A stretch of DNA of 63,679 nt, the filler included, from Octopus bimaculoides (taxonomy: Eukaryota): the NCBI RefSeq assembly GCF_001194135.2. It is 5 parts of 5 records of this genome, joined end to end, with 100 filler letters (N's around TTAATTAATTAA, not from the genome) between each part and the next. Parts side by side here need not be neighbours in the genome. Positions count along the whole stretch, not along the records: positions 48,161 to 61,923 come from NC_068981.1; 4 more parts are not named here. One strand, 5' to 3'. The position numbers and the translations under genes are program-made. This document shows, piece after piece, positions 51,940-52,335 of this stretch; position 1 is the stretch's first letter, and each line of letters begins with the position of its first letter. The notes under the pieces were generated by a model. It saw only the letters and a list, made by a program, of their open reading frames with translations. It did no database searches and was not told the origin of the DNA.

Positions 51940-52335
51940 CACCAGTGATCTAAACGAATAGGTACGCTGTGTAAATGCTATAATTGGTCGACCGCTGGGT
52001 TCTCAGCTGAGGCTGGAAAGGGGATTTGTAGTAAGTTTCCGAGTTAGCAGGTTTATGATAGAAGGAAAAAGGAAAACAAAACCAAAGCAGGACAACAAGT
52101 ATCTCAAATCATTTAGAATATTTACTGAATGTCTTACAGCTGTTTCTGGGATATCCCAAGTGATAGGTTAGCATCTCCATACACCGGGTATTCCATCATC
52201 AGAGACAAGGTGTGTATGTAGGAAAGTTCCAGACAGAGAATTCACAGTTTATGAAGGAATAAAATAGTAGATAGAAGAATAAAGAGTAAAACAGTAAACA
52301 GAAGAATACAGACTGGAGAATATATTTATATATGT
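51940..52335 (-). mobile_element. Penelope-like pseudo-LTR segment carrying the 52130 hammerhead
   Basis: Non-coding segment around a type I hammerhead of the kind known from Penelope-like elements. No RT or endonuclease ORF is seen, and the boundaries are approximate. Confidence 0.45.
52130..52207 (-). ncRNA. Type I hammerhead ribozyme motif (Penelope-like or retrozyme type)
   Basis: Minus strand reads UGUCU-CUGAUGA-[UGGAAUACCC...GGGAUAUCCCA]-GAAAC-AGCU-GUA-AGACA. Stem I is a perfect 5 bp, the core is canonical, stem II has about 9 bp with one mismatch and one bulge, and the cleavage triplet is GUA. Confidence 0.85.

What the first reader, a model, noticed from the sequence alone, without database searches (positions are those of the whole stretch)
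52130..52207. Near-canonical hammerhead ribozyme lying sense within an RNF166-like intron
Seen: the minus strand reads UGUCU CUGAUGA [stem II] GAAAC AGCU GUA AGACA, so the whole catalytic core, a 5-bp stem I and a GUA cleavage triplet are present. It lies in the intron between exons 54516-54734 and 50512-50619 in the transcribed orientation. Known: type I hammerheads with short palindromic stem III occur in Penelope-like elements and retrozymes, and intronic hammerheads are known in amniotes. Inference: it could cut the pre-mRNA between 52135 and 52134 and affect splicing or turnover. Stem II opens with U-A rather than the usual G-C, which may slow it.
Basis: partly seen in the sequence, partly recalled or inferred. 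Interest (0 to 1): 0.75.

Follow-up and report, generated by a model that had tools for sequence, protein, structure and literature searches.

The report
Retroelement-type hammerhead motif in octopus intron
The sequence is a genuine hammerhead-ribozyme motif, one of three related copies that mobile elements left in the introns of the Octopus bimaculoides RNF166 gene. It is absent from other octopuses, so it is most likely a retroelement relic, not a regulator of the gene.

Summary
The minus strand 52207-52130 reads UGUCU CUGAUGA [49 nt] GAAAC AGCU GUA AGACA. It has every hammerhead core nucleotide, a 5-bp helix I, a 2-bp helix III with a palindromic tetraloop, and a predicted cleavage site between 52135 and 52134. 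It lies in the sense orientation in intron 3 of Octopus bimaculoides RNF166.

It is not chance. The same locus holds two more motifs of the same build on the other strand (52863-52943 and 56004-56135), plus a truncated inverted copy. All share CUCUGA(U/A)GA ... AGAAAC AGCU GUA AG. Helix I changes on both sides between copies, helix II is a long hairpin of 49, 54 or 105 nt, and the flanks are unrelated.

None of these copies exists in the orthologous loci of O. sinensis, O. vulgaris or Argonauta hians. They sit in lineage-specific DNA at (TA)n microsatellites, with inverted 5'-truncated partners, which is the anatomy of Penelope-like-element insertions.

No Rfam hammerhead model scores it. The pair next to the core is U-A where G10.1-C11.1 is expected, helix III is of the dimer-dependent kind, and the gene strand carries no second complete copy.

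Best reading: a solitary relic of a Penelope-like-element or retrozyme-type type I hammerhead. Its self-cleavage is probably weak, and there is no evidence that it affects RNF166.

The parts
52203..52207 (-). Helix I, 5' strand (UGUCU)
   Evidence: It pairs with AGACA at 52134-52130, giving 5 Watson-Crick pairs.
52196..52202 (-). Core C3-U4-G5-A6-U7-G8-A9 (CUGAUGA)
52147..52195 (-). Helix II domain: a 49-nt imperfect hairpin of about 17 bp, with one mismatch, three bulges and a 10-nt loop. It closes on the core with U-A followed by G-C and G-C.
   Evidence: Folding energy is -12.9 kcal/mol, z = -1.76 against shuffles.
52144..52146 (-). Core G12-A13-A14
52136..52143 (-). Helix III: A15.1-C15.2, loop AGCU, G16.2-U16.1. 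The whole 8-mer ACAGCUGU is a palindrome, which is the dimer type.
   Evidence: The 8-mer self-duplex is -11.1 kcal/mol.
52130..52135 (-). A17 (52135), the predicted cleavage site between 52135 and 52134, and the helix I 3' strand AGACA
52863..52943 (+). Second hammerhead-like motif (c1), antisense to RNF166: GGCU CUGAAGA [54-nt hairpin] GAAAC AGCU GUA AGCU
52683..52747 (-). c2: an inverted, 5'-truncated copy of the 3' end of c1. It carries GAAAC AACU GUA AGCU but no 5' core.
   Evidence: inverted repeat I9, 82% complementary; E = 2e-4.
56004..56135 (+). Third hammerhead-like motif (c4), in intron 2 and antisense to RNF166: CUCU CUGAUGA [105-nt hairpin domain] GAAAC AGCU GUA AGAG
55274..56331 (.). 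Element that contains c4. Its 159-nt inverted arms (55274-55432 and 56173-56331) are 91% complementary, and one outer end runs into (TA)n.
   Evidence: (I2).
52993..53054 (.). (TA)n microsatellite next to the 3' end of the c1 element. A (TA)n tract also follows the shared left anchor in O. sinensis and O. vulgaris, so it is the likely insertion target.
52339..52556 (-). Octopus SINE copy with a (GAT)n tail, immediately upstream of the segment that carries the hammerhead
   Evidence: families D4, D5, D17, D18; inverted repeat I1.
54516..54734 (-). RNF166 coding exon 3
50512..50619 (-). RNF166 coding exon 4

Best explanation
The motif is a real type I hammerhead ribozyme motif of the retroelement-borne class (Penelope-like-element pLTR or non-LTR retrozyme). 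It was deposited by a lineage-specific insertion into intron 3 of O. bimaculoides RNF166.

In the source elements, such hammerheads process multimeric element transcripts. Two copies swap their palindromic helix III strands, here ACAGCUGU, to build a stable double hammerhead, which then cuts after the GUH triplet.

Here the copy is solitary on the transcribed strand. Helix III has only 2 bp, helix I has 5 bp with no evident loop-loop tertiary contact, and the pair next to the core is U-A rather than G10.1-C11.1. Any self-cleavage of the pre-mRNA is therefore expected to be slow, and the copy is best seen as a neutral relic.

Shown: the motif, its paralogues, the changes on both sides of helix I pairs, and its absence from other species. 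Inferred: the Penelope-like-element or retrozyme origin and the low activity.
For: - **Core and helices.** The complete core and three helices are present.
- **Paralogues.** Two further motifs share CUCUGA(U/A)GA ... AGAAAC AGCU GUA AG and carry different but still complementary helix I sequences: UGUCU/AGACA, GGCU/AGCU and CUCU/AGAG. Pairs 1.3-2.3 and 1.4-2.4 change on both sides.
- **Excess over chance.** The relaxed descriptor gives 5 hits in the 41-kb locus against 0.47 expected. Given one copy of the 3' motif, an upstream CUGANGA preceded by at least 4 complementary bases has a probability of about 1.4e-3. That figure is my own calculation: the core density times an assumed 0.02 pairing chance. 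Two extra copies by chance come to about 6e-6.
- **Helix II.** All three helix II domains fold into one long hairpin that closes on or near the core.
- **Independent insertions.** The flanks of the three copies are unrelated, so they are separate insertions and not local duplicates.
- **Insertion anatomy.** Inverted 5'-truncated partners, ends at (TA)n and clustering within 4 kb match the descriptions of Penelope-like-element insertions (PMC8557442, PMC6765202).
- **Features of the known class.** Helix I of 4-5 bp, a long helix II, an extra nucleotide after A9 and a palindromic helix III are the published traits of Penelope-like-element hammerheads (PMC4209133).
- **Background in cephalopods.** O. 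vulgaris has active Penelope families (PMC13282606), and the giant squid genome has 235 Rfam Hammerhead_1 hits (PMC6962438).
- **Lineage specificity.** The motif is absent from O. sinensis, O. vulgaris and Argonauta.
Against: - No reverse transcriptase or GIY-YIG open reading frame lies nearby, and local ORFs give no Pfam hit. The link to Penelope-like elements therefore rests on anatomy alone.
- Only three copies are available, so the shuffle control on pair changes is not significant.
- No Rfam hammerhead model scores the site.
- The extra base opposite the one after A9 (the A before G12) is not, to my knowledge, a described feature, and it might abolish catalysis.
- With 60 nt of flank on each side, the minimum-energy fold does not keep the hammerhead helices.
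- Assembly gaps at 51468-51934 and 53055-53584 hide neighbouring sequence.
Confidence: 0.72

Rival explanations
1. It is a working intronic ribozyme. The sense copy cleaves the RNF166 pre-mRNA co-transcriptionally and lowers or modulates RNF166 expression in O. bimaculoides.
For: The core is intact, the copy is in the sense orientation inside the intron, and the GUA site is followed by a 5-bp helix I. Invertebrate type I hammerheads with a 2-bp helix III are described as more active as single motifs than the amphibian 1-bp type (PMC7229834).
Against: The motif is not conserved in any other octopod examined. The pair next to the core is U-A, not G10.1-C11.1, and helix I does not extend in a way that could support tertiary contacts. 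Penelope-like-element-type hammerheads cleave poorly in vitro even as dimers (PMC4209133, PMC6765202). The same strand has no complete partner copy. Retrozymes are depleted from introns, which suggests that active copies there are selected against (bioRxiv 10.64898/2026.07.22.740005).
Confidence: 0.07
2. It is a chance match: an accidental juxtaposition of CUGAUGA, GAAA and short complementary runs in AT-rich, repeat-rich intron DNA.
For: No Rfam hit. The folding energy is not significant, with z = -1.27. By my own analytic estimate, made alongside, about 15 strict chance matches are expected in a 2.7-Gb genome. One clear chance match (c5) exists in the same locus.
Against: Only 7e-5 to 6e-3 matches are expected per piece. 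Two independent paralogues share the core, helix III and a complementary but different helix I, with a joint chance of about 6e-6. The helix III 8-mer is fully palindromic.
Confidence: 0.03
3. It comes from a hammerhead-bearing repeat of another kind, for example a SINE-like element such as the schistosome Sm-alpha, or a tandem satellite partly hidden in the assembly gaps. It is not a Penelope-like-element pLTR.
For: There is no reverse transcriptase or endonuclease ORF nearby. A 467-nt assembly gap starts about 195 nt downstream at 51934, so tandem units could have been collapsed. The elements are short, about 290 nt and about 1060 nt.
Against: No tandem periodicity is visible around any of the three copies. 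The inverted truncated partners and the (TA)n targets fit Penelope-like elements better. A 2026 preprint argues that animal retrozymes are themselves non-autonomous derivatives of Penelope-like elements, so the distinction may be one of degree.
Confidence: 0.15

Closest known systems
Penelope-like-element (pLTR) hammerheads with a small palindromic helix III (Cervera & de la Pena 2014, PMC4209133; Lunse et al. 2017, cited in PMC6765202)
   Same: Type I topology, helix I of 4-5 bp, a longer than usual helix II, an extra nucleotide after A9, and palindromic 15.2-16.2 with a palindromic loop 3, so the motif depends on dimer formation. The copies in one genome vary greatly in sequence. The elements carry inverted truncated partners and insert at microsatellites and next to earlier copies.
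   Different: No reverse transcriptase or endonuclease ORF lies near these copies. Helix II is much longer, 49-105 nt against the 7-8 bp of that class. There is also an A opposite the extra nucleotide, so the core-proximal position reads U-A or A.A before the G-C or G.U pair. Activity is untested.
Non-LTR retrozymes of invertebrates (Cervera & de la Pena 2020, PMC7229834)
   Same: A type I hammerhead with a 2-bp helix III capped by a tetraloop. As in the mussel motifs, there are no obvious loop 1 - loop 2 contacts. The sequence context is AT-rich and non-coding.
   Different: Retrozymes are tandem repeats of about 170-400 bp, each with a hammerhead. No tandem repeat is visible here, although assembly gaps adjoin the region.
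Conserved intronic hammerheads of amniotes, HH9 and HH10 (de la Pena & Garcia-Robles 2010, cited in PMC7229834)
   Same: A type I hammerhead in the sense orientation inside an intron of a protein-coding gene.
   Different: Those are ultraconserved across species and match Rfam models. This one is species-specific, and no Rfam hammerhead model reports it, even at E<=10.

Membership tests
Hammerhead ribozyme (general) | Conserved core: C3 U4 G5 A6 N7 G8 A9, G12 A13 A14, A15.1-U16.1, and H17 at the cleavage site | tested here: met
   CUGAUGA ... GAAA, A15.1-U16.1, A17.
Hammerhead ribozyme (general) | Three helices radiating from the core | tested here: met
   Helix I has 5 bp, helix II about 17 bp (imperfect) and helix III 2 bp. 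The fold is not kept when 60-nt flanks are added.
Hammerhead ribozyme (general) | G10.1-C11.1 pair next to the core | tested here: not met
   The pair is U-A in the candidate and A.A in c1 and c4. A G-C or G.U pair follows one step further out in all three copies.
Hammerhead ribozyme (general) | Score at or above the Rfam gathering threshold for a hammerhead model | tested here: not met
   No hammerhead family is reported at the gathering threshold, or at E<=10 on 501 nt or 108 nt.
Hammerhead ribozyme (general) | Site-specific self-cleavage | not testable with these tools
   This needs in vitro transcription or mapping of RNA ends.
Penelope-like-element-type dimeric type I hammerhead | Type I topology with a very short helix III and a palindromic loop | tested here: met
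   ACAGCUGU is a perfect 8-nt palindrome.
Penelope-like-element-type dimeric type I hammerhead | Many genomic copies with compensatory variation | tested here: inconclusive
   Three copies plus one truncated copy were found in 41 kb, and two helix I pairs change on both sides. The whole genome was not available.
Penelope-like-element-type dimeric type I hammerhead | Location in a pLTR that flanks a reverse transcriptase plus GIY-YIG ORF | tested here: not met
   No such ORF lies in or near the introns, and local ORFs give no Pfam hit. Only the inverted truncated copies and the (TA)n targets resemble Penelope-like-element insertions.
Penelope-like-element-type dimeric type I hammerhead | A second complete copy on the same strand nearby, available to form the dimer | tested here: not met
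   The same strand holds only the truncated c2 copy. The c1 and c4 copies are on the opposite strand.
Non-LTR retrozyme | Tandem repeats of about 170-400 bp, each carrying a hammerhead | tested here: inconclusive
   No tandem unit was found. However, a 467-nt assembly gap begins about 195 nt downstream.
Conserved intronic hammerhead (HH9/HH10-like) | Conservation at the orthologous intron position across species | tested here: not met
   Absent from the introns of O. sinensis, O. vulgaris and A. hians, while the intron ends align at 80-97%.

The most novel reading that the evidence does not exclude
The three copies define a hammerhead variant that Rfam does not capture. It has an extra N.A position between the core and the G10.1-C11.1 pair, and a helix II domain of 50-105 nt. 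On this reading the variant is catalytically active, and the sense copy cuts RNF166 pre-mRNA in O. bimaculoides only. That would be a very young, species-specific case of a retroelement ribozyme acquiring an effect on a host gene.
Probability: 0.06. Interest if true: 0.6.

Novelty: new member of a known kind. Interest (0 to 1): 0.3.

Why it matters
The finding shows that O. bimaculoides carries retroelement-type hammerhead motifs that the Rfam models miss, and that several distinct source families inserted into one gene's introns after the split from O. vulgaris and O. sinensis. For ribozyme annotation, it is a reminder that motifs with a long helix II and a shifted G-C pair escape covariance-model scans. 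For RNF166 biology it probably does not matter. If the sense copy did cleave, it would be a rare example of a host-gene ribozyme in the making.

Tried and rejected
- **Rfam scans.** Scans at the gathering threshold and at E<=10 on 13.8 kb, 501 nt and 108 nt gave no hammerhead hit. A scan of the four octopod loci found only a 5S rRNA.
- **Metagenome and viral scans.** I searched for CTGATGA N{20,50} AGAAACAGCTGTAAG. The five metagenome hits were inspected in four loci (L005-L008); none has CUGAUGA preceded by bases complementary to those after GUA, and they look like chance matches, about as many as expected by chance. There were no viral hits.
- **More octopus DNA.** Exact-ORF look-ups for the 52-aa and 38-aa ORFs that overlap the motif found nothing on record. 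A homology search with the 63-aa ORF that spans the c1/c2 element found nothing.
- **Pfam.** A scan of four local ORFs gave no hits.
- **c5.** The hit at L001 9425-9507, which lies outside the window, looked at first like a fourth member. It sits in a block that is 97% conserved among three Octopus species, has no sequence similarity to the others, and loses helix I in O. sinensis and O. vulgaris. I rejected it as chance.
- **Flanks.** I looked for similarity among the flanks of the three copies, which would indicate a tandem or duplicated unit, and found none.
- **Dimer with c2.** I considered a dimer between the candidate and the same-strand fragment c2. I rejected it because c2 lacks a core and its helix I strand does not match.
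- **Covariance model.** A model built from the three copies found no further members in 118 kb from four octopod loci.

Full report
**What is there.** The minus strand of 52207-52130 reads UGUCU CUGAUGA UGGAAUACCCGGUGUAUGGAGAUGCUAACCUAUCACUUGGGAUAUCCCA GAAAC AGCU GUA AGACA. In hammerhead numbering this gives:
- the complete core: C3-A9, G12-A14, A15.1-U16.1 and A17;
- a 5-bp Watson-Crick helix I;
- a helix III of two pairs capped by AGCU, so that ACAGCUGU is an 8-nt palindrome;
- a 49-nt helix II domain that folds as one imperfect hairpin of about 17 bp and closes on the core with U-A, G-C, G-C.

The piece comes from Octopus bimaculoides chromosome CM046601.1. The gene is RNF166 (XP_014777482.1, 100% identity) on the minus strand. 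The motif lies in the sense orientation in the intron between coding exon 3 (54516-54734) and coding exon 4 (50512-50619).

**Is it chance?** A type I descriptor finds only this site in the piece. Thirty megabases of first-order Markov sequence of the same composition gave no strict match. A loose version gave 15 matches, about 0.006 per piece. My analytic estimate for the strict form is about 3e-9 per position, or roughly 15 accidental matches in a 2.7-Gb genome. A single site could therefore still be an accident of a large scan.

Three observations point toward chance. No Rfam hammerhead model reports the site, even at E<=10 on a 108-nt slice. The fold energy is unremarkable, with z = -1.27. 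With 60-nt flanks, the minimum-energy structure loses the hammerhead helices.

**The decisive evidence: paralogues.** A self-comparison of the 41-kb O. bimaculoides locus (L001) showed that the 15-mer AGAAACAGCTGTAAG recurs. Two of the other copies turned out to be complete hammerhead-like motifs on the opposite strand:
- c1, window 52863-52943 (+): GGCU CUGAAGA [54 nt] GAAAC AGCU GUA AGCU;
- c4, window 56004-56135 (+): CUCU CUGAUGA [105 nt] GAAAC AGCU GUA AGAG.

A fourth copy, c2 (52683-52747, minus strand), is an inverted 5'-truncated duplicate of the 3' end of c1.

A relaxed descriptor gives 5 hits in L001 against 0.47 expected. Given one copy of the 3' motif, the chance of an upstream CUGANGA preceded by at least 4 complementary bases is about 1.4e-3. 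That figure uses the core density and my own assumed pairing chance of 0.02. Two extra copies by chance then come to about 6e-6.

Helix I differs between the copies but stays paired. Pair 1.3-2.3 is U-A, U-A, G-C, and pair 1.4-2.4 is C-G, G-C, G.U. With only three sequences, the shuffle control cannot be significant. The slid-register control drops from 85% paired to between 18% and 44%. In all three copies the helix II domain folds into one long hairpin that closes on or near the core. The flanks of the three copies are unrelated. They are therefore independent insertions from different source elements that share only the ribozyme, and not local duplicates. Constraint of that kind, on the ribozyme alone, is what a functional hammerhead inside mobile elements would produce.

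**Conservation.** I fetched the orthologous loci of O. sinensis (L002), O. vulgaris (L003) and Argonauta hians (L004). The ends of the intron align at 80-97% identity between O. bimaculoides and the other two Octopus species. The middle, which holds the hammerhead segment, c1 and c2, has no counterpart. Searches allowing three mismatches, motif searches and a covariance model built from the three copies find nothing in the other species. The Argonauta intron is only about 250 nt.

The left anchor shared by the species ends at a (TA)n microsatellite in both lineages. The O. bimaculoides-specific block of about 2.1-2.6 kb therefore lies in or beside that microsatellite.

**What kind of element.** Several traits fit Penelope-like elements:
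- c1 and c2 form a 65-nt inverted repeat whose outer end abuts (TA)n.
- c4 lies inside an element with 159-nt inverted arms, 91% complementary, one of which also ends in (TA)n.
- Penelope-like elements are described as inserting at microsatellites, next to earlier copies, and often with an inverted 5'-truncated copy. They carry a hammerhead near the 3' end in the pLTR (PMC8557442, PMC6765202).
- The published traits of Penelope-like-element hammerheads fit: helix I of 4-5 bp, an enlarged helix II, an extra nucleotide between A9 and 10.1, and palindromic 15.2-16.2 with a palindromic loop 3 (PMC4209133).
- O. vulgaris has 30 recently active Penelope families (PMC13282606), and the giant squid genome has 235 Rfam Hammerhead_1 hits (PMC6962438).

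Against membership, no reverse transcriptase or GIY-YIG ORF lies nearby and local ORFs have no Pfam hit. No tandem retrozyme-like repeat is visible either, although two assembly gaps flank the region. I therefore file the motif as a hammerhead of the Penelope-like-element or retrozyme class on anatomy, not as a proven part of such an element.

**How it most likely works, or does not.** In the source elements this helix III type works as a double hammerhead. Two copies pair their palindromic ACAGCUGU stretches (-11.1 kcal/mol as a duplex) and swap helix I strands, and each core then cuts the other copy's GUA site. This mechanism is established knowledge from Forster et al. 1988, as cited in PMC4209133. 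In the RNF166 pre-mRNA only the candidate is complete. The c2 copy on the same strand lacks a core and has an incompatible helix I strand, and c1 and c4 are antisense.

Four things argue for slow cleavage at best. As a monomer, helix III has only two pairs. Helix I does not extend beyond 5 bp, so there is no evident loop-loop contact. The core-proximal pair is U-A, which removes the G10.1 that helps bind a catalytic-site metal (established knowledge, not tested here). Penelope-like-element hammerheads cleave poorly in vitro even as dimers (PMC4209133). From my own knowledge, only fast-cleaving ribozymes placed in introns disturb splicing, because the exons stay tethered to the polymerase. I put the chance of biologically meaningful cleavage of RNF166 pre-mRNA at about 5-7%.

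**A variant feature worth recording.** In all three copies the base after A9 (U, A, A) faces an A that precedes G12. Only then comes a G-C, G-C or G.U pair. Read this way, the G10.1-C11.1 pair is preserved one step further out. Together with the 49-105-nt helix II domains, this may be why the Rfam models fail. Whether this geometry allows catalysis is unknown.

**Verdict.** The origin is most likely retroelement-borne and lineage-specific. The proposed function in RNF166 is not supported. The motif is a new member of a known kind, with modest interest.

Noticed in passing
window 52863-52943 (+): A second complete hammerhead-like motif (c1), antisense to RNF166. It has the same helix III and GUA site, a different but still complementary helix I, and a 54-nt helix II hairpin.
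   Followed up: yes
window 56004-56135 (+): A third hammerhead-like motif (c4) in intron 2, with a 105-nt helix II domain. It lies inside an element of about 1060 nt with 159-nt inverted arms (55274-55432 and 56173-56331), one of which ends in (TA)n.
   Followed up: yes
L001 9380-9560 (about 0.5 kb upstream of the RNF166 start; outside the window): A block that is 97% identical among O. bimaculoides, O. sinensis and O. vulgaris, far above the intron identity of 80-90%. It is probably an untranslated exon or a regulatory element, and it ends in a GTAAGA donor-like site. It contains a chance hammerhead-like pattern whose helix I is broken in the other two species.
   Followed up: partly
L004 9215-9333 (+), Argonauta hians RNF166 locus: A full-length 5S rRNA match (91.7 bits) inside the RNF166 gene range. 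It is either a 5S gene or a 5S-derived SINE.
   Followed up: no
L003 (O. vulgaris), exon 4 motif at 20004 and 36391; LINE-like ORFs at 5810-8255 and again at 23010-25643: The O. vulgaris locus appears to hold a segmental duplication of about 17 kb, or an assembly duplication. It includes a copy of RNF166 exon 4, and the annotated protein is shortened to 173 aa.
   Followed up: no
window 49999-50176, 52339-52556, 59820-59895, 60748-60823, 60936-61113 (+ strand) and 53804-53934, 61589-61802 (inverted): Many copies of an octopus SINE with a (GAT)n/(ATC)n tail, in both orientations within the introns. Other SINE families (for example 49739-49901, 51051-51246 and 57125-57287) make up much of the piece.
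   Followed up: partly
window 51468-51934, 53055-53584, 58279-58662: Runs of N. They are also present in the public assembly GCA_001194135.2 at the same places (L001 28609-29075, 26959-27488, 21881-22264), so they are assembly gaps and not masking by the scan. Two of them bracket the hammerhead-bearing block and could hide further copies.
   Followed up: partly
window 52196-52202 with 52138-52142 (-), and the equivalent positions in c1 and c4: In all three motifs the unconstrained minimum-energy fold pairs C3-U4-G5 of the core with C15.2-A-G of helix III and its loop. This extends helix I into an inactive alternative conformer.
   Followed up: partly
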